IMG/VR virus record: IMGVR_UViG_3300049215_000529
Coordinates: 1-64,000 of that record
DNA: 64,000 nucleotides
Direction: 5' to 3' (one strand)
Shown: one piece after another, positions 4,146 to 38,775 of the stretch
How positions within the stretch are numbered: position 1 is the stretch's first letter
How the letters are laid out: the number at the start of each line of letters is the position of its first letter
The notes under the pieces: generated by a model
Databases searched by the model: none
What the model was told of the DNA's origin: nothing
The model's input: only the letters and a program-made list of their open reading frames with translations
Position numbers and translations under genes: made by a program

Positions 4146-5159
4146 TCATGCACCAATTACGACCGATTTTCTGCCCGCTGCACAACCACGAGGGTTCACA
4201 ATTGCTATACCAATTATTTCGCTTACTACCCAGCCCAACTTTAGTTGCTTTGGTTCGTCTGCTGGAAGAACTTCGATGTCCTGGCGGATTGGCATAACAC
4301 CAACGAACTCAGGATCTGCAGCACCATAGATGGTTCCAGGTGGAACGATCTTAGATACCATGATGTCAGTACCCCAGATGTGGGCGTAAAGACCAGTTTG
4401 TAGAACTTCACGCATGGTGACAGGATCGAAATCTCCGCCGCCTACGCCTTGTCCACCGCCTGAACCCCACTTAAGGATATCAGTGAACTCGTTGATGTTC
4501 ATGAAGTACTTGGTGGTTACCAAGTCCCAACGATCAATCTGTTGCTTGATTTCGACAAGATCTCTCTTTAGAAGACCTGCGTCTGCGATATCGGTTAGGA
4601 CGTTTTCGACAGAAGCTGCTGCATCAAGAGCTGCGAAGATGTTTGCATCTTCTTGAGCCATGATTTCTTGACGAGCCTTCTGAACGGAACGGTCGATAAC
4701 GTTGAATCTACGACGCTTGACTTCAGCGATACGGACGGTTGGGTTTGCGTAAATTTCGAATTCAGGAACGACTACACGGTCACCGAATACTCTGGATTCT
4801 GGACCAGCACCGTTGGAGGAGATGACAACTGCGGCAACATCGATATCTCTATCGTAAGTTGGCATAGCACCTTGTGGAAGAGGATCGACAACCAAGGCAC
4901 GACGTGCGATACCGTGGTAATCAAGGTTTCTACGGATTGGGTTTGCCATTGCCTGAGCAAGAGCAATCTTTCCGTCTTGGGTCATAATAGCGCGGGAGAT
5001 TAGCTCATCACGCTTTTCGTCGCTCAAGGATGGTTGACCAGCAAGACCCATGTTAGCTGGAGTGTTCTCTTCAAGAACTGCTGCGTACTTAACTAGAGTC
5101 TGTAGTGCATCCTTAAGGGATGAGGCATTCATTGCGCCTTGGTTGTTGAACATATTCAT
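4146..5159 (-). CDS. Major capsid protein (HK97 fold)
   Basis: 337 aa; HK97-like pattern (IARRALVVDPLPQG; FEIYANP; AQEDANIFAALDAA); strong codon bias, AGGAG SD, terminator behind it; downstream of protease and decoration genes. Confidence 0.85.
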   Translation of the reverse strand: MNMFNNQGAMNASSLKDALQTLVKYAAVLEENTPANMGLAGQPSLSDEKRDELISRAIMTQDGKIALAQAMANPIRRNLDYHGIARRALVVDPLPQGAMPTYDRDIDVAAVVISSNGAGPESRVFGDRVVVPEFEIYANPTVRIAEVKRRRFNVIDRSVQKARQEIMAQEDANIFAALDAAASVENVLTDIADAGLLKRDLVEIKQQIDRWDLVTTKYFMNINEFTDILKWGSGGGQGVGGGDFDPVTMREVLQTGLYAHIWGTDIMVSKIVPPGTIYGAADPEFVGVMPIRQDIEVLPADEPKQLKLGWVVSEIIGIAIVNPRGCAAGRKSVVIGA

Positions 5160-5299
5160 AAACGTTCTCCTAATAGAATTATTTGCCAGTTTTACCAGCT
5201 GAAAGTTACTTACGTAAAAGGTGAGCGGTTCCTTTTAAGGGGATTCGAGACATCACGTCTCACCCAGCCACCCGGCTAGGCTTAGTTTAATTCACTAGA

Positions 5300-6010
5300 T
5301 TATAGTGATGGAGGGCTGAACCAGAAGGTTGCGAATGCAAACTGACGAGGGCCAACTGAGCTAACGTTACCAGATGGGCTGTTTAGAGCTGCAACTAGTC
5401 TGTTAGGGGTGGTTACTAGAGAACCGTTGGACTCGAAGTCAACGAAACGTGCTACTGCTGGAGCGCCACCTACTGCTGCTGGAGAACCAACTGGGGTTAG
5501 AAGACCAGTAGAGGTGTAGGTTAGCTGAGTTCCAACGTCCAAAGTGGTGTTGGTTGGTTGCAAGCCGGTAGAAGTTGCGGTATCGCATGCATCAAGAGAT
5601 ACTGCGTACAAGCCTGGCTTGTCCCAGCAAGTTACCTTGCCAGAGCCGGTTGCGGTGTGAGGTCCTAGAAGAGCAGTGGAAGGAATGGAAGATGCTGGTC
5701 CGTATGAGGTTTGTCCAACAACACCACCTACGACAGAGCCGAATAGGGTTCCATATCCAGTGATACCTTCATCTGCAAGGAACAATGGGCGGGAAGTGCT
5801 CAAAAGGTTAGAGTGAGTTACTACTGGACGCTTTTGAACGCCTGATGGGTTAACATAACCGTCAAGAGAGTCAGCAGCTGACTTGTCACCTGGAACAGGG
5901 ACAGAAATCAAAGTAACGATTTCGCCACCCTTTAGGGTCAAGTAATCGCTATCATAACCATCAAATTGTCCAAGTGGTTGTGTACCTGGTTGTAGAAGTT
6001 TTAAAGACAT
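5300..6010 (-). CDS. Putative capsid decoration/cement protein
   Basis: Directly upstream of MCP; Gly/Thr/Pro-rich; GSGKVTCW motif shared with 13143-13832. Confidence 0.55.
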   Translation of the reverse strand: MSLKLLQPGTQPLGQFDGYDSDYLTLKGGEIVTLISVPVPGDKSAADSLDGYVNPSGVQKRPVVTHSNLLSTSRPLFLADEGITGYGTLFGSVVGGVVGQTSYGPASSIPSTALLGPHTATGSGKVTCWDKPGLYAVSLDACDTATSTGLQPTNTTLDVGTQLTYTSTGLLTPVGSPAAVGGAPAVARFVDFESNGSLVTTPNRLVAALNSPSGNVSSVGPRQFAFATFWFSPPSL

Positions 6011-6150
6011 TTTATTATCCTGTGAATCTTAAATGCCGTTTAGCGGCATAGTTACTTACACCTTAACTTACAAAATCTAGAGAACATATTTTCTTATTGA
6101 TAGAAAATTATGGTCTTATGAACAAAATACAAGCCTATGCCCATATTTGT

Positions 6151-7410
6151 TTATATTAGTCCGATTTCTCCTAGTTGTTTTTCTAGGTCTTCGGCTCCTT
6201 GATCAATCTGCTCTTTGGATGTAGGTGGTTTTCCAGTAGTTGAGGCTGTGCCGCCCTCTTCCTCTGAACCAAACATTTCCTGGCTCTTATAAGATGCCTC
6301 AGTAAGATCCTTGGTAAGAGAATCTTCATGTGATTTCGCCTCTTTGAGTGCTTTATTGATATTTTGCATATCACCCATAAAGGTCTTAAGGGCATGAGCA
6401 ACATCGTCAAAATCGTCTGCTACCAATCCCTTGCCACCATGAAGAAATGGATCGACAACCTTCATTGCCCAACCCTTTTCTACAATCTGTCTTTGCTTGT
6501 AGCTTGGGTTATCAAAATCTTGTTCAATCTTCTGGAAATATGGAAGAATTTTGTCGGTAGCGCTACGGAAAGATTTATATGCATTAACAATTGCGTTTGT
6601 TTCTGGCTTCTTGATAGCTTCTAGCAATTCACCAGCATCTTTTGGTTTTTCTAGCTGATCAATATATGGCTCAATTGACTTATACAAATTATAGTAACCG
6701 GCTAGTTTGTTCTTGAAATTTTGCATCTCTTGAATAAACTCTGGTCTATAATTGTAGCCCGCACCAACACTAGTCTGAATTGAATCGTTTGATTCAATCA
6801 AATCGTCAATTTCGGCAACTAATTTTTGATAGTCTTGCTCGAAACCATCACTAAAAAATGCCATATGATTCTTGAGATAAATTCCGCCAATAAGGGCGGC
6901 AGCTGCTGCAACACCAGCAATAACTAAAGGAGCAACAGCTGTCTTAGTAAGTGGCTGGCTAGCTTGTAGTAAGCACAAGTCAGCTAATGCCATTAACTTA
7001 TCTTGATTCTTGTTATCTAAATCGTTAGCGACTCTAACCAAAGACAGCACCAATTCCTGAGCGTATTTGCGCTGCGTAGATAAACCATCTGGAGTTTTCA
7101 TTACGATATGAATATTGATGTTCTGGCGCTCGTTTTCGTTCTCTACTAAACCATTAAGTTTGTCGTAGGAAGGTAAAATAACCACAGAGTTTGGATGAGC
7201 GTCTTCCATAATATTGTGCTCATATTCCATGTCTTTAGGAGTGTTTGGTTTTACGCCATACAGAGCTTCGATAGCAGAAATGTCTAATGAATCGGCTCGA
7301 TGAGTTTTCTCTAATTTCTTCTTAGAATCCTCAGAATCGTTCGAGATCATTCCCTTTTCTTGGGCTATTTTGACAAAACTGTCGAAGACGTCGCTTTTCA
7401 TATTATTCAT
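6151..7410 (-). CDS. Putative internal head protein with a hydrophobic segment
   Basis: KxA motifs; hydrophobic VAPLVIAGVAAAAALIGGIYL; N-terminal region similar to 11041-12195. Confidence 0.5.
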   Translation of the reverse strand: MNNMKSDVFDSFVKIAQEKGMISNDSEDSKKKLEKTHRADSLDISAIEALYGVKPNTPKDMEYEHNIMEDAHPNSVVILPSYDKLNGLVENENERQNINIHIVMKTPDGLSTQRKYAQELVLSLVRVANDLDNKNQDKLMALADLCLLQASQPLTKTAVAPLVIAGVAAAAALIGGIYLKNHMAFFSDGFEQDYQKLVAEIDDLIESNDSIQTSVGAGYNYRPEFIQEMQNFKNKLAGYYNLYKSIEPYIDQLEKPKDAGELLEAIKKPETNAIVNAYKSFRSATDKILPYFQKIEQDFDNPSYKQRQIVEKGWAMKVVDPFLHGGKGLVADDFDDVAHALKTFMGDMQNINKALKEAKSHEDSLTKDLTEASYKSQEMFGSEEEGGTASTTGKPPTSKEQIDQGAEDLEKQLGEIGLI

Positions 7411-7428: not shown

Positions 7429-8541
7429 TTATGGAGCCTTTGCCGCCACATCATCGATAAAATGGTCTACTATTTTTTTCTTAGAAGTAAACATTCTAGG
7501 AATGAAAACTATAGGTCCACCAGCAGATGTATGGTTATACCAATCAATAGCATCCGTAATAGCTTGAAATCCTGCCGTACTTCTGATATTAGACTCTTGA
7601 CCATCTAATCCACCGTAAACTTCTTTTGCAAAGTTAACCAGCATATTCTCAACGCTTTCTTTATTATTTGGAATATTTTCTATCCAATTATTATCAGTAC
7701 CATTAAAATTCTCTTCATGATAAGATGGGTTGAGTGGGAACTTAGTTTGCTTGGCAGTTATGGTTGGTGCGGTTGTAGTTGGAGCAGAAGTTTGTGCAAC
7801 TGGTTTTCCTTTTTGCATAGTATTGTCTAATGCGTTTGGTCTGCCCAATAAATGATTAATCATGTCACCAGCTACCATGAACCCAGCAGATGCTAACAAT
7901 ACTTTGAAAATTAGCCCTAGAACTCTAGACAAAATACTGCTCGTCGCGCTCTTTTTAACTGAGTACCTGGAGAATATAGATCCCAGATTCATGCCTCGAC
8001 GTTGTTGACCACTTTTCAACAACTGATCGTACTCATTCAAAGCTAATTTTAAATGCTTCGCTTCTCTAATAAGAACATATGACTTTGATTCTAATTCCTT
8101 TTGAGCTTCGGCTGCCTCTTCCTCAGTAGCTGGCTTTGCATGTTCTTGTACCGAGCTGGAAACCATTTCATCTACTTGTGAAGAGGATAGTGGTTTCCCC
8201 AATCCGATAGCGCTCTTAACTTTTTCATAAATGGATTTTAAAATTCCGAAAACATCGATATGGAAAACGGCTGCTGCTAAGCTTAACAGCGCAGTAAACC
8301 ACCATGGCAACCCAATCATTCTAAGTGTTGTGAATATTAGACCAGGTGCCAATAGTTTTAACAAACTATTGGTCTTATCATTTGGATCGATTGAGTTATC
8401 AGCGTATTGCTTTACCTTACCAACAAGATCTGACATAACGCCGCCAGTTTGGGCACTTTTAGATAGACCATCACCATATGCTAGTGCCTCCACTATCATT
8501 ATGTCTACATACAAACTGATGCGGTCTTGTGCATGACTCAT
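7429..8541 (-). CDS. Putative internal virion protein with 2-3 hydrophobic segments
   Basis: LLAPGLIFTTLRMIGLPWWFTALLSLAAAVF and VLGLIFKVLLASAGFMVAG; SKSAQ motif. Confidence 0.5.
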   Translation of the reverse strand: MSHAQDRISLYVDIMIVEALAYGDGLSKSAQTGGVMSDLVGKVKQYADNSIDPNDKTNSLLKLLAPGLIFTTLRMIGLPWWFTALLSLAAAVFHIDVFGILKSIYEKVKSAIGLGKPLSSSQVDEMVSSSVQEHAKPATEEEAAEAQKELESKSYVLIREAKHLKLALNEYDQLLKSGQQRRGMNLGSIFSRYSVKKSATSSILSRVLGLIFKVLLASAGFMVAGDMINHLLGRPNALDNTMQKGKPVAQTSAPTTTAPTITAKQTKFPLNPSYHEENFNGTDNNWIENIPNNKESVENMLVNFAKEVYGGLDGQESNIRSTAGFQAITDAIDWYNHTSAGGPIVFIPRMFTSKKKIVDHFIDDVAAKAP

Positions 8542-10031
8542 TTTACGTTAACTGCCTGTCTAAGATTTTGCAAGTCGCCAGAGTTTCTTGTGTATATAGA
8601 ACGATCATTTGGTGTTCTTCCAATTTGACCTAATACATAAGCCTTTTGGTTATCATCTAACTGACCAACATAGGTTGCATAAAATGCCTCTACAACGCTA
8701 CGCGTGGTATCAAGAATATCATTTAGTTCATCCAATGCTGGCATGAATTGCTTACCAGGATCTTTAAGCATGCTGAAAAATTGACGAGGATACATACCAA
8801 GAGGAATTATTTTTTCGCCCTGACGCATATAGGTCGAACTAAATCTTCTCATAGAACCATCAGTTGATCCTATTTGTTGCATTGCGGTGCCATTGTTGCT
8901 CATAATTTGCTGTACTAATCCAAAGAAGCTATCAATTCTGTCGAAATTGATATCTCTAATGGAAAACGGCAAAGTACTAATGATGTTGTTCAGAATTTGT
9001 GGGGACACCTTTTGGGCACCGGCGCCTGCCTGTTGTGTTTGCTTGTCTTTCCCGGCTGGAGCTGTTGTGGTTGTTCCTGCTGCTAGTGAACAAGCTTTTC
9101 CATCAGGTCCCTGCAATGTTGGAGCCACTTCAGTAATTTTCTTAACGAAAGCAGTGTATTTTTTCTCCAACTCTGGGGTGGTAGCCTTGGTTCTTAGCAA
9201 CCATTGTGCCTTAGCATATAATGTTCTTGCAACTACACAGAAGTCGAATTGCGGATGATTGATTCCCAATGGTCCGCCCTCACGTCCAGGAATCTCAACG
9301 GAAATACCATTATTATTCACCCAAGCTTTGATTCCAGCAGCAGTAGAGACGTCTCCAAAAGTTAGAACCTTATCTCCATCTTTGTTGTAATACTTGTAAT
9401 CTAGAACTTGTGGAAAATTAGTCAAAACTTCATTAGCTGGCAACGTTTTTTCTGGTGGAGTGTACTTCTCACTTAAACCAGATTCTAATTGAGTGTTGGC
9501 TTGCTGAATAATTTTGCGCAACTGCACATCCATAACTGGATTTGGTCTAGCTGCCAACTGAGCCTGCAAAGACTGAATGTACTTATTAAGTAGGTCTTTG
9601 TTTACGTAAAATCCTCTGGTAACACGACTTCTATCCTCTACTTCCAACAAGCCAGCGTTTGGCTCTAGTTGATAAAGTTGATAGTCTTCGCTATTTGGAT
9701 CTTCAGCCAAGTCATAAGCAACTCTCTGACCATCTACGGTTATCTTGTTTTGCATCAAGAAATCTGTTAGCGCACCAAGTCCCTCTAGATTGACTACAGT
9801 CAACTGTGGATCGCCTTCATTGAATCCCTTTTCATGAGAAATTTCGGCTGGAGCATTTGGATCTTTGGTACCAGGAATTTGATCTGCCAAACTATCTAGT
9901 AGCGATCTCAAAGTAACAAGAGATTGGTTGTCAGGCGCAGCTTGACCCTTCTTTGAGAATTTGTTCTCAAAGTCCTCAGCATGTTTGACTAGTTGGTCGA
10001 TTAATTTTTGGTCATCATAAATGATAGACAT
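8538..10031 (-). CDS. Hypothetical protein (putative internal virion protein)
   Basis: 497-aa ORF, ATGA overlap with the next gene. Confidence 0.5.
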   Translation of the reverse strand: MSIIYDDQKLIDQLVKHAEDFENKFSKKGQAAPDNQSLVTLRSLLDSLADQIPGTKDPNAPAEISHEKGFNEGDPQLTVVNLEGLGALTDFLMQNKITVDGQRVAYDLAEDPNSEDYQLYQLEPNAGLLEVEDRSRVTRGFYVNKDLLNKYIQSLQAQLAARPNPVMDVQLRKIIQQANTQLESGLSEKYTPPEKTLPANEVLTNFPQVLDYKYYNKDGDKVLTFGDVSTAAGIKAWVNNNGISVEIPGREGGPLGINHPQFDFCVVARTLYAKAQWLLRTKATTPELEKKYTAFVKKITEVAPTLQGPDGKACSLAAGTTTTAPAGKDKQTQQAGAGAQKVSPQILNNIISTLPFSIRDINFDRIDSFFGLVQQIMSNNGTAMQQIGSTDGSMRRFSSTYMRQGEKIIPLGMYPRQFFSMLKDPGKQFMPALDELNDILDTTRSVVEAFYATYVGQLDDNQKAYVLGQIGRTPNDRSIYTRNSGDLQNLRQAVNVK

Positions 10032-10039: not shown

Positions 10040-11038
10040 TTATTGGTTTGCTGCGGGATGAACTTGTTGTCTAAGCTGGGCGATAATCATTTGAAGAGGT
10101 AGCTCTGGCAAATTTTGTTGCTGCCATTTTTTCAAAGCATCCATACTAACAAGATCTTTGACGTTGATAACAGCTGCCTTATCTTTGGATCTTACCTGAA
10201 AACCGTTGGCAAAGGCTTGTGACAATCCAGCAAGCTGAGCTTCAGTCAACTTAGGGGCTTGCTTTTTGTAAGTAACAAATGGCTTATCAGATTCAATAAA
10301 AGCTCTGTAGGCAGGCTTTTCCAAAATGCCATCTTTGATTTCTTTGTACATTCTCTGAATTGCTCTTAAGTGCTTAGCGATGCGGGGAGCTAGTTCAGCT
10401 TTTTCTGCAGCATTAATGTCGTTAGCATCTTCTGGAACTTCATTCTTAAGACCTTCAAGATTGGACTCTGTATATGACTTCACTGGCAAGTTAAAATCTC
10501 TTGCTAGATTCAACATAGCAAATGCAAATGCATAAGCATTGTGAAGAGCTGCGTTCGTACGAGGACCCCACGATCCATCAGCGGTAAGTTCGCCGCCCTT
10601 AGGGTTACCAATTCTCTTCATAGTGTCCATAACTACACTTAGACGAGTTGGATCGGATGGCTTCTTTTGATTCAAATTTTGCTTAGTAGGATCTGGATTG
10701 AACTCAACTCCTGGTACATCAGAGTTTCTAAGATAGTTCTTGGTAATGAAATCTCCGAACGAATCTCTGCCAACAGCTTCCTGTTGTTGTCTTTTATCAC
10801 CAGTAAGACCTTCTAAATGAATTTGCTGAGTAACCGCTTGACCCAAATTAATGAGTTCCTGTTGCATGGCTTTAACAGTAGGATCACCAACGACACCACC
10901 ACCAGCATGACCAGCAGGTGCAGTAGTTCCTGGATGATAGGAAGTTGCGCTGTAACCAGTTGGTGGTGGAGGTGGAGGAGCAGCAATCTTCTGAATCTCC
11001 TGCACTATTTTTTTAAAGTCTTTTTTAGGCGAAGTCAT
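10040..11038 (-). CDS. Putative virion protein with peptidoglycan-binding-like motif
   Basis: DPTVKAMQQELINLG ... ADGSWGPRTNAAL resembles PG_binding_1 with an insertion; likely start 11038 (track 11062). Confidence 0.5.
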   Translation of the reverse strand: MTSPKKDFKKIVQEIQKIAAPPPPPPTGYSATSYHPGTTAPAGHAGGGVVGDPTVKAMQQELINLGQAVTQQIHLEGLTGDKRQQQEAVGRDSFGDFITKNYLRNSDVPGVEFNPDPTKQNLNQKKPSDPTRLSVVMDTMKRIGNPKGGELTADGSWGPRTNAALHNAYAFAFAMLNLARDFNLPVKSYTESNLEGLKNEVPEDANDINAAEKAELAPRIAKHLRAIQRMYKEIKDGILEKPAYRAFIESDKPFVTYKKQAPKLTEAQLAGLSQAFANGFQVRSKDKAAVINVKDLVSMDALKKWQQQNLPELPLQMIIAQLRQQVHPAANQ

Positions 11039-11040
11039 AT

Positions 11041-12195
11041 TTATGCCTTTGTCTGAACCCATTGATTGTAAAACTGCTCAACCTCTTGTTCATAAGTAGC
11101 CAACTCTTTTTCCAAGATAGTTGCCATCTGAGCTTCTTGAGTTTCTGGAACCTTACCCATTCTATTGGCAAGATCAGTTAAACTAGCTGACTCTTCTTTA
11201 ATCCAAGCCATTGCGGACGAATTACGAGCAACCGATCCTATCAATCCTGCTGACTGTAATTTTTGTCTTAGAGTTCCAATTCTCTTATAAAGACTTGATA
11301 GAGGAGAAGCTTCTGGAGTATACTCTTTCATTTGCTGAGTGACAGAAGGTTTATCCTGCTCAGTACCAGTGTCATTTTCCACCGGAGTACCAGCATCAAC
11401 ATCTCTGCGTTTAGCAATGGCTTGATCTGCCAAAGTGTTTGCTTGACGGAAAGCGCCCTGAACTCTACTCCAAGTATAATCAGAAAGTCCTCCCAATCCA
11501 TAAGTTCCACCACTTAAAATAGATGGATCCAATCTCTCATATAATATCTTTAGTTGCTTTTTAATTTCATTGATATTGTAAACGGTAGGATCTCCTGCAA
11601 GGCTTGAGATGCTGTTGACCCAATTGTTAATAGAAAAAGTAAGCTCAGGATTAGATGCCTTAGCAATTGCATTTACTTGATTCACAATACCATTAGCTAA
11701 GCGATTGACTTCGGCAAGTGATGCTGATTGTGCAAAAACATTCTTGACAGCCGAAAGCACTTCGGAAGCAGAAGATAGTTTACCAGTTGGATCCTTCTCT
11801 ACCATTGTGACATGCTTCAAGTGCTGATCTAAGATATCTTCAAAGACGGCTTCGCTACTATCAACGTCTTCTAGTTTGTGGCTTCCCTTGGGATGTGCGG
11901 CATGCACCAAGTCATCACCAGTTTCTTTATTTACTTCATAAAGAGTTTGTACCTGTTTGTATGCAAGTAGTTTTCCTTCTAGCTCAGTAGCATACTTATC
12001 AAAACCGGCGTGTCTCAAACCAGAACATAGCTTGAGTACATTTTCAGTTAAGCTCTCAGAAGGAGATAGATCCAATTCAGAGGCAGCTGCTACTTTAGTC
12101 ATAGGCTGGTCCTTGACCAATCCCTTGTCTCTAGCGAGCTTCTCTAAAGAACGCATAGTGACAGAATCTTCAAAATTGGTATGTTTAAAACTCAT
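11041..12195 (-). CDS. Putative internal head protein, paralogous N-terminus to 6151-7410
   Basis: EKLARDKG / AAHPKG / VEKDPTG match VKIAQEKG / DAHPNS / VMKTPDG. Confidence 0.5.
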   Translation of the reverse strand: MSFKHTNFEDSVTMRSLEKLARDKGLVKDQPMTKVAAASELDLSPSESLTENVLKLCSGLRHAGFDKYATELEGKLLAYKQVQTLYEVNKETGDDLVHAAHPKGSHKLEDVDSSEAVFEDILDQHLKHVTMVEKDPTGKLSSASEVLSAVKNVFAQSASLAEVNRLANGIVNQVNAIAKASNPELTFSINNWVNSISSLAGDPTVYNINEIKKQLKILYERLDPSILSGGTYGLGGLSDYTWSRVQGAFRQANTLADQAIAKRRDVDAGTPVENDTGTEQDKPSVTQQMKEYTPEASPLSSLYKRIGTLRQKLQSAGLIGSVARNSSAMAWIKEESASLTDLANRMGKVPETQEAQMATILEKELATYEQEVEQFYNQWVQTKA

Positions 12196-13073: not shown

Positions 13074-13116
13074 ACTTGACTCCAAAACACTACATATCAG
13101 CTCGTTTCCTTTTGAC

Positions 13117-13174
13117 CAACCAGAGCACTTCAATCATCGGGTTCAGAACCACAAAACTTCCAACATTGGGTTCA
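13117..13174 (-). repeat. Imperfect 29-bp tandem duplication of the 3' end of gene 13143-13832
   Basis: TGAACCCAATGTTGGAAGTTTTGTGGTTC then TGAACCCGATGATTGAAGTGCTCTGGTTG (22/29 identical). Confidence 0.8.
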
Positions 13175-13963: not shown

Positions 13964-14515
13964 TTAATCTTTTTCATCCTCAAAATCAGATTGACCTAAT
14001 GGATGTTCAACAATCTCAATTGCTTCATCATCAATATCAACATCCAGCAAATCATCAGCTTTGCCATCATCTGCCATATTGAATGGAGTTCCATGTTCCA
14101 AAAGATTTTTAACCTGTTTTTCAGGCGTTAATCCATGGGTATGAGGATCATGAATCTTGGTAGGGTTCTTTGGATGTGGAGGCTTTCCCCTAGCATCGTC
14201 CTCGTCGCCGTCCAATAGGCTCTTAAACGAGATTTCCTCCTTAGGAAGCTCCTTGGACTCCTTTGGCTCTTCTAACAAACTTTTAAATTCAATTACGTCA
14301 CCTGGCTCAATACCATCACGAGCAATTTTAGCTAAAAGTTTAAGAATACGATCAGAATGGGCAGTTAATCCTGCTTCATCTAGGATATCCATAGCGGAAT
14401 GAAGATAATCTGCTGCCTTAACAAGATTTTCCATACCTTGTTTCTCTGCATGAGTTTTTAGTTCACGCTGCATTCCAGCAATTAATTCATCTTCAAATAC
14501 ACTTTTCTTAATCAT
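13964..14515 (-). CDS. Hypothetical head-module protein
   Basis: FEDE N-terminus and helical module shared with 14512-14757. Confidence 0.55.
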   Translation of the reverse strand: MIKKSVFEDELIAGMQRELKTHAEKQGMENLVKAADYLHSAMDILDEAGLTAHSDRILKLLAKIARDGIEPGDVIEFKSLLEEPKESKELPKEEISFKSLLDGDEDDARGKPPHPKNPTKIHDPHTHGLTPEKQVKNLLEHGTPFNMADDGKADDLLDVDIDDEAIEIVEHPLGQSDFEDEKD

Positions 14516-14757
14516 TTGGATCCTGAAACAGAAGAAGTCTTGCCGGATAGGTCTTTAGCCAATCCTTGCAAGACTTCGGTAATTTCTGCGGCTTCTGCTG
14601 GCATACCAGCTTGTTCAAAGATCTCAGCAGCAGCATTTAAACAATTAACTGCTTGTGCTAGCTTATTGAATCCATGCTTGTTTTCAACTTGTGCTTCTAC
14701 AAGTTTATTTTCCATAGAACGATAGATCTCGTCTTCAAAGCTAGCGGTTTTGAACAT
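14512..14757 (-). CDS. Small head-module protein, paralog of 13964-14515
   Basis: MFKTASFEDEIYRSM vs MIKKSVFEDELIAGM; AGGA SD. Confidence 0.6.
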   Translation of the reverse strand: MFKTASFEDEIYRSMENKLVEAQVENKHGFNKLAQAVNCLNAAAEIFEQAGMPAEAAEITEVLQGLAKDLSGKTSSVSGSK

Positions 14758-14773: not shown

Positions 14774-15595
14774 TTATTTCTTTGAAGAAGACTTAGCTTT
14801 GGCTTTTTCCTTAGCAGCTTTTTCTTTCTCTTTTTCCTTGGCTGCCTTTTCCTTAGCTTTTTCCTTAGCTGCCTTTTCTTTTTCCTTGGAAGCCTTGTCC
14901 TTAGCAGATTGAGAATCGCTCTTAGAGTCTTTCTTGCTCTTCTTAGTTTCTTTTTCCTTCTTCTTGGCTTCTACAACTAGAGAGGCAAGTTTTAGGCTGA
15001 AGCTAGAGGACTTTTCCATTCCAACTTTGTCAAGAGCGGCGGAGGCGGTAAGTAGGCTGTCGATAGCAAGATCAAATGCTGCATCAACTACTACTTCATC
15101 GTCTGCGGAGCTGCTGTCAGAGCTGTCGGAAGAGGAATCTTTCTTTGCCTTGCGGGCATCGTTGTCGTCTGCGCTGCTAGAGTCGCTGTCAGAGGAGGAC
15201 TTTGCCTTACGGGCATCGTTATCGTCGTCAGCAGAACTGCTGTCAGAAGAGGACTCTTCCTTCTTCTTGCGAGCATCGTTCATGTCAGAAGCTGAACTGC
15301 TGTCACCAGAAGAGGATTCTTCCTTCTTCTTACGTGCATCGTTAGCATCTGCTGAACCACTGTCACATTTGCAGAAGTTCTTTGGTTTGCCGCACTCGTC
15401 GCACTTCTTGCCACCACGAGCATCGTTGTCGTCATCTGCCATTGAAGAGTCGCAGGAACAGCTTTCTTTGCTGCACTTTGAGCACTTAGCAGAAGCAGTC
15501 TTGTATTGTTCGCCAAACAAAGACTTGTGAGCTTCACTCTTAAGAACTGCATCCATTGTTGCAGCTACGAAATCTGATACACTTTTGTTAGTCAT
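14774..15595 (-). CDS. Highly charged low-complexity protein (Ser/Asp/Lys repeats, Cys clusters, KEKAA tail)
   Basis: Five NDAR repeats, CSKC/CDEC clusters; AAGGA SD; strong codon bias. Confidence 0.65.
   Translation of the reverse strand: MTNKSVSDFVAATMDAVLKSEAHKSLFGEQYKTASAKCSKCSKESCSCDSSMADDDNDARGGKKCDECGKPKNFCKCDSGSADANDARKKKEESSSGDSSSASDMNDARKKKEESSSDSSSADDDNDARKAKSSSDSDSSSADDNDARKAKKDSSSDSSDSSSADDEVVVDAAFDLAIDSLLTASAALDKVGMEKSSSFSLKLASLVVEAKKKEKETKKSKKDSKSDSQSAKDKASKEKEKAAKEKAKEKAAKEKEKEKAAKEKAKAKSSSKK
15100..15450 (-). repeat. Degenerate coding tandem repeats (SSADDNDARKKK units)
   Basis: Recurrent gcatcgtt and ctgctgtcaga on the plus strand. Confidence 0.7.
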
Positions 15596-19198: not shown

Positions 19199-19201
19199 GC
19201 A

Positions 19202-20137: not shown

Positions 20138-20907
20138 TAGTGACCTATTTCTGAAAAGAATCCACCATAGTTTTCTGTTGGACCAAAACCTCTTTGACCC
20201 GCATCATTATCAAATTCTCCCACCATTGGGACAACATCTGTTTTCTCTTGATCATACGGCGTTATTGGTCTATCAGGATCGTAATTCTGACGAGTCGGAG
20301 ACTGATCATTAATATATGTATACAACGCATCTGCCGGATTTTGCTTAGTATGATCTAAATACGGCGCAAAAGAATCTTGACGACTCTCATCTAGATAAGT
20401 ATCTCGATTATCTCCAATATACTCTCGCTCATTAGAAACTATATCAGCTGCATTTTCATCTTTGGATGATTTGCAAGCCTTGATTATTTCTTCATACAAT
20501 CTGACTATATGAGGATCTACTCCAACACCAAAACCTAAAGCCTTGGCTTCTTCGATAGCTCTTTGTGGACTTTCTCCCATATATTTACATTTGAAAAGAG
20601 CCGTAACTAGACCCGTTCTATCTTTACCAAAATGACAATGTAAATAAGTTGGACCACCATCTATTAGAAGCTTTTTTAAATTATATTCGAATAGCCTGCG
20701 AAGTGAAGATGGTTTTTCATCAAGATACAATTTAATATGCTCGATACCTAATAATTTGCAGGTACGATCAATTCTATCACCGGCAGCTTTATCTAAGCTA
20801 ACAATTTTATTGATACCTAGTTGTTCTTTTAACTGCACAACATCTTGTGGGGATGGGGCACTGCCACGGTACAAACCCTTAGTAATTTCTCTGAGCCTTT
20901 GAATCAT
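20137..20907 (-). CDS. Cys-dependent tyrosine/dual-specificity phosphatase-family protein
   Basis: LYRGSAP N-terminus and intact HCHFGKDRTG (CX5R) loop. Confidence 0.85.
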   Translation of the reverse strand: MIQRLREITKGLYRGSAPSPQDVVQLKEQLGINKIVSLDKAAGDRIDRTCKLLGIEHIKLYLDEKPSSLRRLFEYNLKKLLIDGGPTYLHCHFGKDRTGLVTALFKCKYMGESPQRAIEEAKALGFGVGVDPHIVRLYEEIIKACKSSKDENAADIVSNEREYIGDNRDTYLDESRQDSFAPYLDHTKQNPADALYTYINDQSPTRQNYDPDRPITPYDQEKTDVVPMVGEFDNDAGQRGFGPTENYGGFFSEIGH

Positions 20908-30406: not shown

Positions 30407-30470
30407 TTAGATACCTCTAGAACGGGTTTTCATATATCTGTATGCCTTTATATGTAATAATAGCCGTAGG

Positions 30471-31577
30471 TTAAATATTCCATTTATCTTCATACATAGT
30501 GATTCCGACATCTGTTGTGCCGTAATCTGGGTTAATATTCGTTGGATTTCCTAAATCTTCATCTGGCAAGTCTACTCCATCTGGCAATCCAAACAAGCCA
30601 GAGGTAGGGGCTGGATTCAAATACTTATCTATTAAATTCTTAACTTTTTCAGAATCCATCTTAGGCTCATCGCCAGTATAATCGCGCCCGAAATCTAGCT
30701 CAGCCGGGGTTTTATCCTCGGAGTCATTTTGAGGCAGGTACTTGTCTAGCAAGCCGCCTATCTGGGCAGAGTAAGGATAGCTCTCGGAATCTCCTAAATT
30801 AACTGATTCAGGAGAAATTGAGGTATCTGGTTCGCCAGTAGGACCTAACTGAATAGGGCTGTTGTAGGACTCGGAATCTCCCAAGATAGGACCTGACCCA
30901 ATATTTTCATCAATTGGATAATCTATAGAATGCACATCATGTTTCTTCTTAGGAGCCTTAGGCACTCCTTGATATGGGCTATTCTTCCAGTCATAGATTG
31001 AAGTTCCATGCTCTTTGGGAGGCAGCATATGATCTTCATTATCGTCAGCAAAGAAAGCGCCTGGGCTCTTATGTGGAGCATCTGTAATAGTCTTTATCTT
31101 CTTACCTTCACTCATCGCAGTATAGGCACCATCACCATAATCAAAGTTTGGACCATCATTGTCATCGCCCTTAAACTTGTCATTTAACTTATGAACCAGA
31201 CTCATGCCTGGCATACGGGCTTGTTTAATAATTTTTTCAAAAATGGAAGCCCTAGCTTGACGTTCAGGATTTTTCTTTACACGATTACCATTATCCATTT
31301 GCCAAGAATCATCGGCAACATAACGTGGTTTTAGACGTTCACGACGGGCATCCAAAAACTCTTTAACACTTTTGTAATTTTGCAGACCATGCCAGCCAGT
31401 TCCTGGACCGACGTGCTCCATTCCCGGAATTGTATACAAATCGTAGTTGCGATAAAATGGTTCCTCGAAACGAGGTTGCACCACGATTGCAGGATCTGAT
31501 TTGTATTTCTTTTTTCCAGGTGTTGGTTCATTAGGTCCGCCGTCGCCTTGAAAATATGCTTTTTTATTTGGGCACAT
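30471..31577 (-). CDS. Acidic, largely disordered head-module protein
   Basis: N-terminal KKAYFQGDGGPNEPTPG matches the protease repeat. Confidence 0.55.
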   Translation of the reverse strand: MCPNKKAYFQGDGGPNEPTPGKKKYKSDPAIVVQPRFEEPFYRNYDLYTIPGMEHVGPGTGWHGLQNYKSVKEFLDARRERLKPRYVADDSWQMDNGNRVKKNPERQARASIFEKIIKQARMPGMSLVHKLNDKFKGDDNDGPNFDYGDGAYTAMSEGKKIKTITDAPHKSPGAFFADDNEDHMLPPKEHGTSIYDWKNSPYQGVPKAPKKKHDVHSIDYPIDENIGSGPILGDSESYNSPIQLGPTGEPDTSISPESVNLGDSESYPYSAQIGGLLDKYLPQNDSEDKTPAELDFGRDYTGDEPKMDSEKVKNLIDKYLNPAPTSGLFGLPDGVDLPDEDLGNPTNINPDYGTTDVGITMYEDKWNI

Positions 31578-32337: not shown

Positions 32338-32350
32338 TCATTTGTTTCAA

Positions 32351-35055: not shown

Positions 35056-35064
35056 TAAAATCCT

Positions 35065-35784: not shown

Positions 35785-35796
35785 AAGTGCCTCTGT

Positions 35797-36687: not shown

Positions 36688-36690
36688 AGA

Positions 36691-38298
36691 TCACCCGAAG
36701 ATCTTAGAGTTATTGAAAACCGCGCCCTCATAGGTTTCTTCCATTCCTCTTCTGTAAAGAGGACGGCAGTTACCATCTTTGTCTTGATATACTTTGTGAA
36801 CTGGCAAGCCGGTATGGCTGCAAATTGGGTGCTCGCTGCTTGCGTTTCTAACCATCTTAGAACATTGAGATGGAGCAGTTGCTTCCTTCTTATTAGCTAG
36901 ACATTGCATGAATAGCTGGAATCCAGTGGCATAAGCCTTCTCATCTCCAGCGCTTGATAGCACATTCAAAGCATCTTCTGCACTAGCATGGTTGCCTTCG
37001 GCAAGTGCTTTTCTGATGTTTGCTAACAAATCACTTGGCTTCAATTCGAATTGTGGAGATGCAGCTGCTGCAGCTTTGAAATCGCTGGCATTGCTGACAT
37101 ACAACTCGTTAATACCTTCTTGGTTGAATGAGGATACGGTGCCGTTGCACAACATAACGCTAGGCTTAGTAATCTTACCATCAGCTAGCTTGACTGGAAC
37201 AACGAAACCAACTCTGCCAGCGTCTAAGGCGACGTTGTAGAAAATAGTATGGTCATCACTCTTAGCAACATTAACTTGAGGGTTCTTGTGACCATAACCA
37301 GTTAGCTCTCTAACAATGTGGTCTCTGGCAACTTTAACCTTGTCAGCACCAAATTGGAACGCTGCTTGTCCATATGCGGAAGTAAATTGCTTTTCAAAAG
37401 AAACGAATTCATCGTATTTTGGAAGTTCAACATCCTTCTTAGATGCCTCGGCAATTTTCTGTCCAACAATCTGATTCTGGAAGAATTCAGCTTTACCTTG
37501 TCTGGTAGCATTTAGCTTAGTCAAAGCAATTTCTGCATCACTAACTTCGCGATTCTCAGAAGCTGCGGTGGTTAGTACGCTCAAAATGCTGGTGCCACTG
37601 ATTGACAACTTGTTACCAGCAAAAGTAGTTAGATAAGCCTTTAGTGCGGTATAGTTCAACTCTTGTGGACCAGTATTTCCCATGAAAACTTCGGCTTCAA
37701 CTACCTTGTTATTTTGGACTTCTACTGGAACATAAAAGCTAGTGACTCCCTTTGGAGTTTCGTAATCAGCCTTAATTACAATGAACTTGTCGTTACCATC
37801 ACTTACTGCAATGGCACTTGGCTTCAAATTCCAAGCATCCAAAGTGGAAGCAACAGATGCCATAGCCTTATCAGCTAGTGGTTGAGAGTACATCTTGACT
37901 GGTAGGTGCTTGTCGAATACACTTTGCAGTGCGTTGGCTAGTACAGTGTCACCAACTTCGTATGGATTCACTTGAACTGCTTCGTCTCTCTGATAAGTAG
38001 TAGCTCCTTTTAGCTCTTCTACTTGACCCATTTCATTTTGGAACAACTCAGCAAACTTAGTATTACGAGTATACAGTTTGTTGTAAAGCGTTCTCAATTC
38101 CGCTTTGCGGATGAACATGGTGTTATTGGATGCCATTTTGTGAACCACTCTGGACATTGCGCCGATAGTGTGGTCACTTGGGTAAGCATCTACTGCCTTG
38201 GCTAACTTAGCGGCAAGAATTGGGGTAGCTATTCTCTCGTTATCTTCTACGGACTTTGCTAGAGAACCTACTAGTTGTTGAATTTTGTCGAGGCTCAT
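36691..38298 (-). CDS. Hypothetical (probably structural) protein
   Basis: 535 aa; two similar FYVPV/FVVPV segments; C-terminal Cys/His cluster. Confidence 0.55.
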   Translation of the reverse strand: MSLDKIQQLVGSLAKSVEDNERIATPILAAKLAKAVDAYPSDHTIGAMSRVVHKMASNNTMFIRKAELRTLYNKLYTRNTKFAELFQNEMGQVEELKGATTYQRDEAVQVNPYEVGDTVLANALQSVFDKHLPVKMYSQPLADKAMASVASTLDAWNLKPSAIAVSDGNDKFIVIKADYETPKGVTSFYVPVEVQNNKVVEAEVFMGNTGPQELNYTALKAYLTTFAGNKLSISGTSILSVLTTAASENREVSDAEIALTKLNATRQGKAEFFQNQIVGQKIAEASKKDVELPKYDEFVSFEKQFTSAYGQAAFQFGADKVKVARDHIVRELTGYGHKNPQVNVAKSDDHTIFYNVALDAGRVGFVVPVKLADGKITKPSVMLCNGTVSSFNQEGINELYVSNASDFKAAAAASPQFELKPSDLLANIRKALAEGNHASAEDALNVLSSAGDEKAYATGFQLFMQCLANKKEATAPSQCSKMVRNASSEHPICSHTGLPVHKVYQDKDGNCRPLYRRGMEETYEGAVFNNSKIFG

Positions 38299-38319
38299 TT
38301 ACACACCTATTCTATAATG

Positions 38320-38775
38320 TTAAACCAACTCAGGGTATTTATTTAATACCTCTTTTTTAGCTGATTCGGAAAGCTCATTTAATAAAGCCTTGACCAATTT
38401 CTTGTTAGCAGCTAATTTAGAAGGTAAGTATCCTGGAACCGCATGCAACTCTGCGCGTGGGATTCCTAGTTTTTCAGCAGCCAATCTGACAATTGGATCG
38501 CCTTTGTAAGAGACTTGCAAGTCGCTTGCAGTCTTACTAACGGTTACTTCCCAAGCAGTCTTTTCTTCTTCTTCAGGTTGGTATAGGGCAACGATGTATT
38601 CACCATCTTCTGCGCTTTGGACTTGCCATAAATCAGCACCCTTATCCCCGTCCTTAAATCTAACTACATCCCAAGCCACAGACTCAAGCTGGTCCTTAAC
38701 CTCGCTGAGTTTAAAGGCTTTCTTGTAGATTTTGTGTGCTAAACCAGAGTAATCTATCGAATTTTTTGACATCAC
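38320..38775 (-). CDS. Hypothetical protein, first gene of the head module
   Basis: GGGAG SD; follows terminator. Confidence 0.6.
   Translation of the reverse strand: MMSKNSIDYSGLAHKIYKKAFKLSEVKDQLESVAWDVVRFKDGDKGADLWQVQSAEDGEYIVALYQPEEEEKTAWEVTVSKTASDLQVSYKGDPIVRLAAEKLGIPRAELHAVPGYLPSKLAANKKLVKALLNELSESAKKEVLNKYPELV

What the first reader, a model, noticed from the sequence alone, without database searches (positions are those of the whole stretch)
4146..38775. Candidate capsid cargo-processing system: a shared K-x-A motif across about 20 head-module proteins
Seen: K-x-A (sometimes K-x-G), often followed by Q/S/Y/A/R, recurs near N-termini or at domain/linker borders. Examples: MQKTAQ (24449), MFKTAS (14757), MIKRAY (20137), NKKAYFQ (31577), YKTAS (15595), SKSAQ (8541), VKIAQ/RKYAQ/TKTAV (7410), VKEAQ (30406), YKFAQ/KKDAY (34300), YKIAA (36687), EKTAW (38775), KKYGQ (portal), VKYAA (MCP), and many sites in the protease/scaffold (NKQAYFQ, YKTAQ, VKRAE, RKEAG). 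Known: T4 gp21 and phiKZ gp175 cleave many internal head proteins at a short consensus ending in Glu. Inference: the 15620-19198 protease cleaves after K-x-A and matures a large packaged proteome, a different specificity from those enzymes. The motif is short and K and A are common, so enrichment needs testing.
Basis: partly seen in the sequence, partly recalled or inferred. Interest (0 to 1): 0.8.

Follow-up and report, generated by a model that had tools for sequence, protein, structure and literature searches.

The report
Conserved Lys-x-Ala sites in phage head proteins
A giant soil phage and its relatives, including phage G, keep a short hydrophobic-x-Lys-x-Ala/Gly motif in the head proteins encoded between the portal and capsid genes; it is most likely the cutting site of their capsid-maturation protease, with a specificity unlike that of T4 or phiKZ, but no cleavage has been shown.

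Summary
The quoted K-x-A strings are all present, but their count excess in this window is modest: 106 observed against 83 expected (z about 2.7). It is confined to the portal-to-capsid block (4146-26375). The TerL-to-38775 stretch shows no significant excess.

Stronger evidence comes from relatives. K and A/G two residues apart are jointly conserved far more than eight control spacings (0.58 vs 0.27-0.42, p about 2e-9). They often stand alone in proteins only 25-45% identical. The conserved sites define [LIFM]-x-K-x-[AG]. This motif is about twice as frequent as expected in the block (54 vs 25) and at expectation elsewhere in the 204-kb genome.

K-x-A is also enriched in the head blocks of two distant relatives, phage G (55 vs 30) and Tunturi_5 (45 vs 24).

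Gene 15620-19198 encodes a gp21/assemblin-fold serine protease (His132, Ser183) fused to about 930 scaffold-like residues. It carries the motif at its N-terminus, at the end of the protease domain, and 40 residues from its C-terminus.

The best reading is a protease-scaffold polyprotein that cuts itself, the capsid and portal proteins and about ten unknown head proteins at this motif. Cleavage, the exact bond and packaging are inferred, not shown.

The parts
15620..19198 (-). 1192-aa protease-scaffold polyprotein: protease domain (residues about 36-250) followed by about 930 residues of linkers, two internal repeats and helical scaffold-like sequence
   Evidence: PHROG 18299 head maturation protease, E 1e-15. 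36% identity to phage G gp19. NCBIfam NF045541, E 3.6e-6. 1769 relatives, most of the best 150 being 1000-1600 aa.
18401..19198 (-). Protease domain with its flanking helices (residues 1-266). His132 = 18803-18805; Ser183 = 18650-18652. Zinc-ribbon-like insert at C193/C196/C207/H209.
   Evidence: AF2 model, pLDDT 85. VIA Z 10.1 to T4 gp21 5jbl and Z 6.7-7.7 to herpesvirus proteases. Invariant residues across 19-30% identical relatives.
19181..19195 (-). FIKQG: motif at the extreme N-terminus of the protease
   Evidence: K4 is invariant in phage G, Tunturi_5 and Rctr197k. The motif is present in 98% of 133 representatives, against 3% expected.
19091..19105 (-). FRKVA: motif before the protease core. 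A second copy, LKKIA, is at 19070-19084.
   Evidence: K34 and A36 are invariant, including in phage G gp19 (LVKTA).
18401..18415 (-). LEKLA: motif at the end of the protease domain (candidate release site)
   Evidence: By the looser [KR]/[AGS] criterion, 0.95 conserved in close relatives. K-x-A stands at the same place in phage G (LLKIA), Tunturi_5 (KKVA) and Rctr197k (ILKAA). K-x-[AGS] is there in 106 of 132 representatives.
15743..15757 (-). LRKEA: motif 40 residues from the C-terminus (candidate maturation-type site)
   Evidence: Joint conservation 0.93. The last K-x-[AG] lies 36-42 residues from the end in most of 133 representatives; the strict motif is present in 59% against 7% expected.
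16121..17959 (-). Internal conserved motifs of the scaffold part: LNKKG 17945-17959, ENKQA 17654-17668, LYKTA 17189-17203, FVKYA 16694-16708, IVKRA 16664-16678, RAKLA 16337-16351, VRKEA 16121-16135
   Evidence: Joint conservation 0.86-1.00 in close relatives and 0.43-0.77 in 117 more divergent representatives. LYKTA precedes an indel-rich Pro/Ala linker. LNKKG and ENKQA head the two internal repeats.
4146..5159 (-). Major capsid protein. About 44 N-terminal residues are absent from phage G gp27. Candidate site LVKYA at 5082-5096.
   Evidence: PHROG 2522, E 1e-76. The alignment to phage G starts at residue 44-45. The motif is invariant in 56 relatives. Tunturi_5 MCP has LLKSA and QKLA in its N-terminus.
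6151..7410 (-). Unknown head-block protein. Sites: FVKIA 7363-7377, QRKYA 7060-7074, LTKTA 6937-6951.
   Evidence: Sites are 0.96-0.98 conserved in a protein 44% conserved overall. The N-terminal 22 residues are conserved, then sequence becomes variable.
7429..8541 (-). Unknown head-block protein. Site LSKSA 8452-8466.
   Evidence: K is invariant in 45/45 sequences and the next-but-one residue is A in 43 and G in 2. Only P5, P3 and P1 are conserved, and gaps follow.
8538..10031 (-). Unknown head-block protein. Site FSKKG 9945-9959.
   Evidence: K-x-[GA]-Q is kept before a Pro/Ala linker in a protein only 25% conserved, whereas VKHA nine residues earlier is not conserved.
10040..11062 (-). Unknown head-block protein. 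Site IQKIA 10982-10996, followed by a proline run.
   Evidence: Joint conservation 0.86-0.88 in a protein 29% conserved, with a strong indel zone downstream.
11041..12195 (-). Unknown head-block protein. Sites: LEKLA 12133-12147, MTKVA 12088-12102, FDKYA 11989-12003.
   Evidence: Conservation 0.87-1.00 in a protein 33% conserved.
13964..14757 (-). Two paralogous small proteins (13964-14515 and 14512-14757) that share an M-x-K-x-x-x-FEDE N-terminus. Site FNKLA 14656-14670.
   Evidence: Paralogy and N-terminal conservation. FNKLA is 0.95 conserved by the looser [KR]/[AGS] criterion. The VKAA site of 13964-14515 is poorly conserved.
14774..15595 (-). Unknown head-block protein. Site QYKTA 15494-15508.
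   Evidence: Joint conservation 0.91 with an indel zone downstream. This site lacks a hydrophobic P5.
20907..21671 (-). Unknown head-block protein. Sites: LVKLA 21567-21581 (0.74) and LIKNA 21183-21197 (1.00).
23160..24449 (-). Unknown head-block protein next to the portal gene. Sites: IVKEA 23997-24011 and INKYA 23232-23246. The N-terminus is MQKTAQ.
   Evidence: Joint conservation 0.85-0.95 in a protein 41% conserved.
24516..26375 (-). Portal protein. Candidate site MKKYG 26148-26162 (K74).
   Evidence: Portal PHROGs and 33% identity to phage G gp14. The site is 0.91-0.95 conserved while its flanks are 48% conserved.
30471..31577 (-). Protein outside the enriched block whose N-terminus (PNKKA 31557-31571, then YFQG..NEPTPG..KY) copies the scaffold's internal repeat
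   Evidence: BLASTP E 6e-8 to scaffold residues 415-440. There are too few relatives to test conservation.

Best explanation
Gene 15620-19198 encodes a serine protease of the T4 gp21 / HK97 / herpes assemblin fold. It is fused to a long scaffold-like tail.

Proposed mechanism:
- Inside the procapsid the protease recognises an extended peptide, [L/I/F/M]-x-K-x-[A/G]. The three fixed residues alternate, so in a strand they would face one side.
- It cuts at or next to this motif, most probably after the Ala/Gly.
- It frees itself from the scaffold at LEKLA266 and trims its own N-terminus.
- It cuts the scaffold into pieces. One cut lies 40 residues from the C-terminus, which recalls the herpesvirus maturation site.
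- It removes 16-36-residue N-terminal peptides from the capsid protein and from about ten unknown proteins encoded between portal and capsid genes, and about 76 residues from the portal. Those conserved N-terminal peptides probably serve as capsid-targeting tags.

Shown here: the fold, the invariant His and Ser, the motif, its spacing-specific conservation, its restriction to the head block, and its presence in distant relatives.

Inferred: that the motif is cleaved, by this enzyme, at which bond, and that the substrates end up inside the head.
For: - The motif is under spacing-specific selection: joint conservation 0.58 vs 0.27-0.42, p 2e-9.
- At sites such as 7429 K28, 10040 K25, 11041 K34 and 6151 K156, only P5, P3 and P1 are fixed, and indels or Pro/Ala linkers follow.
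- Logo of 31 conserved sites: P5 is L/F/I/M in 64%, P3 is K in 96% (R in 2%), P1 is A in 81% and G in 17%. Non-conserved K.[AG] sites lack the P5 preference.
- Genome-wide, the motif occurs 54 times vs 24.7 expected in 4146-26375, 13 vs 13.4 in 26434-38775, and 166 vs 163 in the remaining genome.
- 13 of 21 block proteins have the motif in their first 45 residues, against 45 of 254 others (Fisher p 3e-5).
- A priori test in other genomes: K.A is 55 vs 30 in phage G gp4-27 and at expectation in gp28-138; it is 45 vs 24 in the Tunturi_5 head block.
- In 117 representative protease-scaffolds the K.A ratio is 1.56, while A.K, KA and K..A are 0.9-1.0.
- Link to the protease: the motif sits at the protease's own N-terminus, at the end of the protease domain and near the C-terminus, at matching places in 19-36% identical relatives.
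- Fold: Z 10.1 to T4 gp21.
- T4-type and phiKZ-type motifs are not conserved.
- Precedent: enzymes of this fold read P3 and P1 (A-X-E in SPN3US, PMC5694885 and PMC10052503). Herpes assemblins are protease-scaffold fusions that cut after Ala at release and maturation sites (YLQA-T and VQA-S, PMC4498786).
Against: - There are no proteomic or N-terminal data for this phage or any relative that I could read. The phage G virion mass-spectrometry paper was not held.
- The raw K.A excess in this window is small (z about 2.2, and about 1 without the protease-scaffold gene), and [LI].E is as count-enriched.
- The hydrophobic P5 was added after looking at this block, so the z of about 6 is inflated.
- Relatives share ancestry, so the p-values overstate independence.
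- Several conserved K-x-[AG] sites lie in folded cores (MCP K64, K230, K307; portal K306, K321) and are probably structural.
- Phage G's capsid protein has no N-terminal extension, so capsid-protein cleavage is not universal in the clade.
- Tunturi_5 shows no hydrophobic P5 preference.
- HK97's capsid protein reads TFNK-SLGS at the junction I know as its maturation cut (sequence; the cut position is from my own knowledge). That fits hydrophobic-x-K with Lys as P1, so the bond may be after Lys.
Confidence: 0.6

Rival explanations
1. The motif and the enzyme are as in the best explanation, but the bond cut is after the Lys. The register would be hydrophobic(P3)-x-K(P1), then x-[A/G](P2'), which matches T4 ([L/I]-x-E, cut after E) and HK97 (F-N-K, then S).
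For: - [LIFMVY].K is itself enriched in the block (206 vs 160, z 4.4).
- HK97 gp5 reads TFNK-SLGS at what I know as its maturation junction (sequence; the junction is my own knowledge).
- In phage G the shared N-terminal signature is R-L-x-K-K, with the small residue less constant.
- Lys is almost never replaced by Arg, which is the kind of strictness expected of a primary specificity pocket.
Against: - The Ala/Gly is as invariant as the Lys (98% A or G). The phage enzymes of this fold described in the papers read here show fixed residues on the non-prime side only (A-X-E, PMC10052503).
- Excess of hydrophobic-x-K without a following A/G is weak (152 vs 134, z 1.9).
- Herpes assemblins take Ala at P1 (PMC4498786).
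Confidence: 0.25
2. The motif is a docking or targeting element that is not cut. For example, a short strand or helix by which head proteins bind the scaffold, portal or protease during assembly.
For: - The N-terminal segments carrying the motif are conserved over 15-35 residues in several families: FxxFVKIAQEKGLIS, and FEDSxTMRSLEKVAxEKGLVK. This is more than a bare cleavage site needs.
- T4 capsid-targeting sequences are such N-terminal tags (PMC5694885).
Against: - Many sites are isolated three-residue islands next to indel-rich linkers.
- They occur at domain borders of the protease's own polyprotein, in the same places as the self-cleavage sites of herpes and phiKZ-type enzymes (PMC4498786, PMC5694885).
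- Targeting and cleavage are not exclusive: T4 tags end in the cleavage motif.
Confidence: 0.15
3. The motif is cut, but by another protease: a host enzyme or a second phage protease, not the 15620-19198 product.
For: Phage G encodes ClpP/ClpX and other proteases (PMC12484599). I did not search this genome for a second protease.
Against: - The motif travels with this protease family across 19-36% identical relatives and marks that protein's own domain borders.
- Enrichment is limited to genes around the protease, in hosts as different as Bacillota (phage G) and Acidobacteriota (Tunturi_5).
Confidence: 0.05
4. There is no function. The pattern is a by-product of Lys/Ala-rich helices, paralogy and shared ancestry.
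For: - The raw count excess is small, and [LI].E shows a similar excess.
- Some cited sites are not conserved.
- 14774-15595 contains KEKAAKEKA repeats.
Against: - Only the i,i+2 spacing is specially conserved, and the reversed and shifted patterns are not enriched.
- Conserved sites have a P5 preference that non-conserved sites lack.
- The excess is replicated in two distant genomes and absent from their other genes.
Confidence: 0.05

Closest known systems
T4 gp21 and the phiKZ gp175 / SPN3US gp245 prohead proteases (MEROPS S77, S80)
   Same: - Same fold (Z 10.1 to 5jbl) and a His/Ser active site.
- The gene lies among head genes.
- A short motif read at alternate positions.
- Many substrates with N-terminal propeptides, self-cleavage, and paralogous internal head proteins (PMC5694885, PMC10052503).
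   Different: - Those enzymes cut after Glu ([L/I]-x-E, [S/A/G]-x-E, A-x-E). Here those motifs are not conserved, and the conserved one is hydrophobic-x-K-x-A/G.
- This protease is fused to about 930 scaffold-like residues and carries a zinc-ribbon-like insert.
- It has no Pfam match.
Herpesvirus assemblin-scaffold polyprotein (UL26 / UL80a, MEROPS S21)
   Same: - An N-terminal protease of the same fold fused to a C-terminal scaffold.
- A candidate site at the protease-scaffold junction and another about 40 residues from the C-terminus.
- A small residue (Ala) at the likely P1 (PMC4498786).
   Different: - Fold similarity to the herpes enzymes is weaker (Z 6.7-7.7).
- Herpes motifs have hydrophobic P3/P4 and Ser/Thr at P1', with no fixed Lys at P3.
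- The herpes triad is Ser-His-His; the third catalytic residue here is unassigned.
- Many more candidate substrates here.
- A nested in-frame scaffold gene was not looked for.
HK97 gp4 and the protease-scaffold fusions of other phages (lambda C/Nu3, P2 gpO; my own knowledge for the last two)
   Same: - The Ser motif and the final E-x-S-x-V..A..A strand align with HK97 gp4 in the expected places, though not significantly.
- NCBIfam 'prohead protease/major capsid protein fusion' matches at E 3.6e-6.
- Fusion of protease and assembly functions in one gene.
   Different: - The HK97 capsid protein carries its own delta domain. It reads K-S at the junction I know as its maturation cut (sequence; the cut position is from my own knowledge).
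- No known multi-protein cargo.
- Profile similarity here is below significance.
T4 capsid targeting sequences (CTS)
   Same: Short conserved N-terminal peptides on internal head proteins that end in the protease motif (PMC5694885). Compare the conserved 16-36-residue N-termini here.
   Different: Targeting has not been tested here, and the sequences are unrelated.

Membership tests
Assemblin-fold prohead serine proteases (T4 gp21 / HK97 gp4 / phiKZ gp175 / herpes assemblin) | Characteristic beta-barrel fold | tested here: met
   AF2 model with pLDDT 85. Top Foldseek hits are T4 gp21, EBV, PRV, HCMV and HSV proteases. VIA Z is 10.1 to 5jbl over 132 residues, rmsd 2.8.
Assemblin-fold prohead serine proteases | Invariant catalytic His and Ser | tested here: met
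   H132 and S183 (VSMG) are invariant in 59 sequences and in phage G, Tunturi_5 and Rctr197k. Their geometry in the model and the third triad residue were not examined.
Assemblin-fold prohead serine proteases | Match to a curated family profile (Pfam S77 / S78 / S80) | tested here: not met
   No Pfam protease family matched even at E 10. Only PHROG 18299 (E 1e-15) and NCBIfam NF045541 (E 3.6e-6, far below its cut-off) matched. hhalign to HK97 gp4 was not significant.
Assemblin-fold prohead serine proteases | Gene located between the portal and major capsid genes | tested here: met
   Portal at 24516-26375, protease at 15620-19198, MCP at 4146-5159.
Assemblin-fold prohead serine proteases | Proteolytic activity on head proteins | not testable with these tools
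   This needs expression or virion proteomics.
Glu-specific giant-phage / T4 cleavage system ([L/I/S/A/G]-x-E) | Conserved x-x-E motifs at propeptide borders | tested here: not met
   [LI].E and [SAG].E joint conservation is 0.39 and 0.36, against 0.58 for K.[AG]. There is no conserved [LI].E in the protease-scaffold or in most divergent head proteins.
Herpesvirus-type protease-scaffold polyprotein with release and maturation sites | Protease fused to a C-terminal scaffold | tested here: inconclusive
   The fusion is clear and typical of the family: most relatives are 1000-1600 aa. The tail's scaffold role is inferred from its position, repeats and low complexity only.
Herpesvirus-type protease-scaffold polyprotein with release and maturation sites | Self-cleavage sites at the junction and near the C-terminus | tested here: inconclusive
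   The motif is present at both places and conserved there. Cleavage has not been shown.
Herpesvirus-type protease-scaffold polyprotein with release and maturation sites | Nested in-frame gene for the scaffold alone | not tested
   Internal starts were not examined.
Capsid-targeting N-terminal tags (T4 CTS type) | Conserved N-terminal peptide ending in the protease motif, on proteins found inside the head | tested here: inconclusive
   Conserved N-terminal peptides ending in the motif were seen in the MCP and in the 6151, 7429, 8538, 10040, 11041, 14512 and 14774 proteins. Location in the head is unknown.

The most novel reading that the evidence does not exclude
A very large, unannotated clade of jumbo and mega phages uses a herpesvirus-like protease-scaffold polyprotein. 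The clade includes phage G, Tunturi_5 and hundreds of soil contigs of 190-480 kb; the protease domain has more than 1700 relatives. The polyprotein would cut after Ala/Gly in hydrophobic-x-K-x-A/G. It would release itself at a junction site, drop a 40-residue C-terminal tail, and strip short N-terminal targeting tags from a dozen head proteins. Those proteins may include enzymes delivered to the host. That would be the closest phage counterpart of assemblin's architecture and Ala specificity. It would also give a ready-made tag-and-cut rule for loading proteins into giant capsids.
Probability: 0.35. Interest if true: 0.7.

Novelty: new variant of a known kind. Interest (0 to 1): 0.55.

Why it matters
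Head maturation by a gp21/assemblin-type protease is well known. However, the papers I read describe the cleavage rule only for Glu-specific phage enzymes and for herpesviruses.

A predicted Lys-x-Ala/Gly rule for the phage G-like lineage would have four uses:
- It would let anyone predict mature termini and propeptides in hundreds of uncultured giant phages.
- It would point to which unknown genes encode internal or ejected head proteins.
- It would strengthen the evolutionary link between phage and herpesvirus protease-scaffold fusions.
- It would give a simple, directly testable hypothesis in a cultivable relative: phage G virion peptide mapping.

It also corrects annotation. For example, Myrna gp97, annotated 'tape measure', contains this protease domain.

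Tried and rejected
- The first AF2 run, with 18 close sequences, gave an unusable model (pLDDT 44, collected). It was solved with a 59-sequence alignment.
I dropped that row and did not resend it.
- Sequence search of the PDB with the protease domain found nothing.
- Pfam found no protease family, and Pfam and PHROGs found nothing for the candidate substrates.
- hhalign against HK97 gp4 alone was not significant.
- The search for homologous proteins returned only fragments of the same clade, with no names.
- Literature searches for a K-x-A prohead-protease motif or for phage G processing found nothing. The phage G capsid and mass-spectrometry paper (PMC7316594) is not held.
- Relatives of the 28809-38775 genes are too few and too similar to test conservation.
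- Pseudomonas phage Lu11, a more distant capsid-protein relative, shows no K.A excess, so the rule does not extend to the whole capsid-protein family. Myrna shows a weak excess (z 3.1).
- I considered and rejected treating M-x-K-x-A at extreme N-termini as strong evidence.

Full report
CONTEXT

The window is the first 64 kb of a single 204,190-bp contig. Nearly all genes are on the minus strand.
- terminase large subunit, 26434-28296;
- portal, 24516-26375;
- a 1192-aa gene at 15620-19198 whose N-terminal part is a head-maturation protease;
- a GIY-YIG homing endonuclease, 12300-13133;
- major capsid protein (MCP), 4146-5159.

The nearest cultured relative is Bacillus phage G: MCP 54% identical, protease domain 36%, portal 33%. 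About 15 further genes between portal and MCP have no Pfam or PHROG assignment. There are two exceptions. One is a phosphatase-like gene at 20137-20907. The other is a glucosaminidase-like lead for 22060-23157.

All quoted strings exist. The count excess is modest.
That is only 14th of 400 a-x-b patterns.
- K.A[QSYAR] reaches z 5, but it was chosen after seeing the data.
- Using an ORF set for the whole genome, K.A is 72 vs 57 in 4146-26375, 34 vs 27 in 26434-38775 and 275 vs 273 elsewhere.
- K.A has the highest ratio among twelve related control patterns. The T4-type [LI].E is equally count-enriched (89 vs 67). Counts alone therefore settle nothing.

CONSERVATION

I fetched 160 related IMG/VR loci centred on the MCP and the protease and aligned each head-block protein with its relatives. 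MCP is 91-100% identical across contigs of 190-480 kb, while its neighbours fall to 25-45%.

Within those divergent proteins a subset of K-x-[A/G] pairs is almost invariant.
- The joint conservation of K(+2)[AG] averages 0.58, against 0.27-0.42 for eight other K/[AG] spacings in the same alignments. 27 of 93 pairs are at least 90% conserved, against 3-13 in the controls.
- Mann-Whitney p is 2e-9. It is 4e-7 after removing MCP, portal, the highly conserved 13143-13841 protein and the protease-scaffold gene.
- Column-by-column views show only three fixed positions at several sites (7429 K28, 10040 K25, 11041 K34, 6151 K156, 8538 K27): a hydrophobic residue, Lys two residues later, and Ala/Gly two residues after that. 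The residues between and beyond vary, and gaps or Pro/Ala linkers follow.
- A logo of 31 conserved sites gives P5 L/F/I/M 64%, P4 often V, P3 K 96% (R 2%), P1 A 81% / G 17%, P1' Q/E/S/A. Non-conserved K.[AG] sites lack the P5 preference.

Some sites fail this test. VKHA in 8538-10031 is not conserved.

WHERE THE REFINED MOTIF IS

[LIFMVY].K.[AG] occurs 54 times against 24.7 expected in 4146-26375 (z about 6). It occurs 13 times vs 13.4 in 26434-38775, and 166 vs 163 in the other 243 ORFs of the genome. The z of 6 is inflated, because P5 was read from this same block. The flat result elsewhere is the informative part.

Thirteen of 21 block proteins carry the motif within the first 45 residues, against 45 of 254 others (Fisher p 3e-5). 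Candidate N-terminal cuts would remove:
- 26 residues from MCP;
- 16 from 6151-7410;
- 30 from 7429-8541;
- 29 from 8538-10031;
- 27 from 10040-11062;
- 21 or 36 from 11041-12195;
- 34 from 14774-15595 and from 14512-14757;
- 76 from the portal.

The one exception is the protein at 30471-31577, whose N-terminus copies an internal repeat of the scaffold.

INDEPENDENT GENOMES

- Phage G head block gp4-gp27: 55 vs 30 expected (z 4.8-5.4). Its next 97 ORFs (gp28-gp138): 57 vs 62.
- Tunturiibacter phage Tunturi_5 head block: 45 vs 24 (z about 5).
- In 117 representative protease-scaffold proteins from a 1.8-billion-protein library, K.A is 1.56 times expectation and the refined motif 2.23 times. A.K, KA, K..A, E.A and K.S are 0.9-1.0.
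- Myrna shows a weak excess and Lu11 none.

THE ENZYME

- Residues 1-266 gave a confident AF2 model once a 59-sequence alignment was used (pLDDT 85).
- The best structural match is T4 gp21 (Z 10.1, 132 residues, rmsd 2.8). Pseudorabies, HCMV, EBV and HSV-1 proteases follow (Z 6.7-7.7).
So are a C-x2-C...C-x-H insert and the terminal E-x-S-x-V..A..A strand.
- No Pfam protease family matches. PHROG 18299 and NCBIfam NF045541 do match.
- The remaining 930 or so residues contain two 75-residue repeats, Pro/Ala linkers and helical segments. Most relatives are also 1000-1600 aa.

LINK BETWEEN MOTIF AND ENZYME

The polyprotein carries the motif at several places:
- at residues 2-6 (present in 98% of 133 representatives, against 3% by chance);
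- at 32-36 and 39-43 (K34 and A36 are invariant, including in phage G's LVKTA);
- just after the protease domain (LEKLA266). Phage G has LLKIA, Tunturi_5 has KKVA and Rctr197k has ILKAA at the same place, and K-x-[AGS] is there in 106 of 132 representatives;
- at the head of both repeats, and before the Pro/Ala linker at 668;
- 40 residues from the C-terminus. The last K-x-[AG] lies 36-42 residues from the end in most representatives, and the strict motif is present in 59% against 7% by chance.

This layout parallels the release and maturation sites of herpesvirus UL26, which cuts after Ala (PMC4498786). It also parallels the C-terminal self-cleavage of the phiKZ and SPN3US enzymes (PMC5694885).

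By contrast, conserved [LI].E or [SAG].E sites are rare. None lies in the polyprotein.

INTERPRETATION

The most economical reading is that hydrophobic-x-K-x-A/G is the recognition and cleavage motif of this protease. On that reading the portal-to-MCP block encodes its substrates: scaffold, MCP, portal and about ten unknown proteins with conserved N-terminal tags. This would be a T4/phiKZ-like maturation system with a different specificity and a herpes-like fused architecture.

What is not settled:
- whether cleavage happens at all;
- whether the bond is after Ala/Gly (herpes-like; all fixed residues on the non-prime side, as in the Glu-specific phage enzymes) or after Lys (the T4 and HK97 register, hydrophobic-x-P1; HK97 gp5 reads TFNK-SLGS);
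- whether the substrates are packaged cargo.

I found no paper describing this motif, and I could not read the phage G virion proteomics paper.

VERDICT

The cleavage specificity is plausible and distinct from the Glu-specific enzymes, but no experiment supports it. I rate this a new variant of a known kind of system, of moderate interest, and directly testable in phage G.

Noticed in passing
window 12300-13133 (-): A GIY-YIG homing endonuclease gene (PHROG 314, E 2e-38) sits inside the head-gene block, between two candidate substrate genes.
   Followed up: no
relatives of window 18401-19198 (for example P0014, P0028, P0202, P0203): Many homologous protease-scaffold genes carry an insertion of about 370 residues after about residue 103 of the protease domain. 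Fragments from the same family search carry Hint / homing-endonuclease / intein Pfam hits. These are inteins in the protease gene; the window's copy has none.
   Followed up: partly
window 18572-18622 (-), residues C193, C196, C207, H209: There is a C-x2-C...C-x-H zinc-ribbon-like insert in the protease domain. It is conserved in phage G gp19, Tunturi_5 gp331 and Rctr197k_047, with weak Pfam zinc-ribbon hits. I know of no such insert in T4 gp21 or HK97 gp4 (my own knowledge).
   Followed up: partly
window 20137-20907 (-) and 22060-23157 (-): Two enzyme-like genes lie between portal and protease: a dual-specificity/tyrosine-phosphatase-like gene (PF13350, E 2e-6) and a glucosaminidase-like gene (ESM Atlas feature score 0.91; a lead only). 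They may be head-delivered enzymes. The phosphatase has no conserved motif.
   Followed up: partly
window 16010-17959 (-) and 31500-31577 (-): The scaffold part has two tandem repeats of about 75 residues (residues 415-490 and 512-590: NK[KQ][AG]Y[FY]Q..NEPTPG..KY..PFPGVGPVDGMHPSP). The start of this repeat reappears at the N-terminus of the 30471-31577 protein (E 6e-8).
   Followed up: partly
L166:7683-11318 (Mycobacterium phage Myrna gp97): Myrna gp97 is annotated 'tape measure', but residues 55-214 match this protease domain (32% identity, E 3e-17) and the protein is 1211 aa long. It is probably a protease-scaffold fusion that was mis-annotated.
   Followed up: partly
L001 (phage G gp5, gp9, gp10, gp13, gp17, gp20, gp38): Several phage G proteins (six in the head block gp4-gp27, plus gp38 outside it) begin with a shared M-x-R-L-x-K-K-like N-terminus, often followed by Ala or Ser. 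This may be phage G's version of the tag and site.
   Followed up: no
window 4146-5159 versus its neighbours: The MCP is 91-100% identical across contigs of 190-480 kb, while adjacent head genes drop to 25-45%. The 4001-6000 interval containing the MCP gene is also more G+C-rich (0.47) than its neighbours (0.37-0.41).
   Followed up: no
window 4146-26375: [LI].E is count-enriched in the head block (89 vs 67, z 3.1) but not conserved. It is probably a helix periodicity effect, and it is a caution for motif counting.
   Followed up: yes
window 28297-28808 and 19199-19486: There are two non-coding-looking gaps on the gene strand, upstream of TerL and of the protease gene. The second holds only a 43-codon ORF. 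No tRNA or Rfam family was found anywhere in the window.
   Followed up: partly
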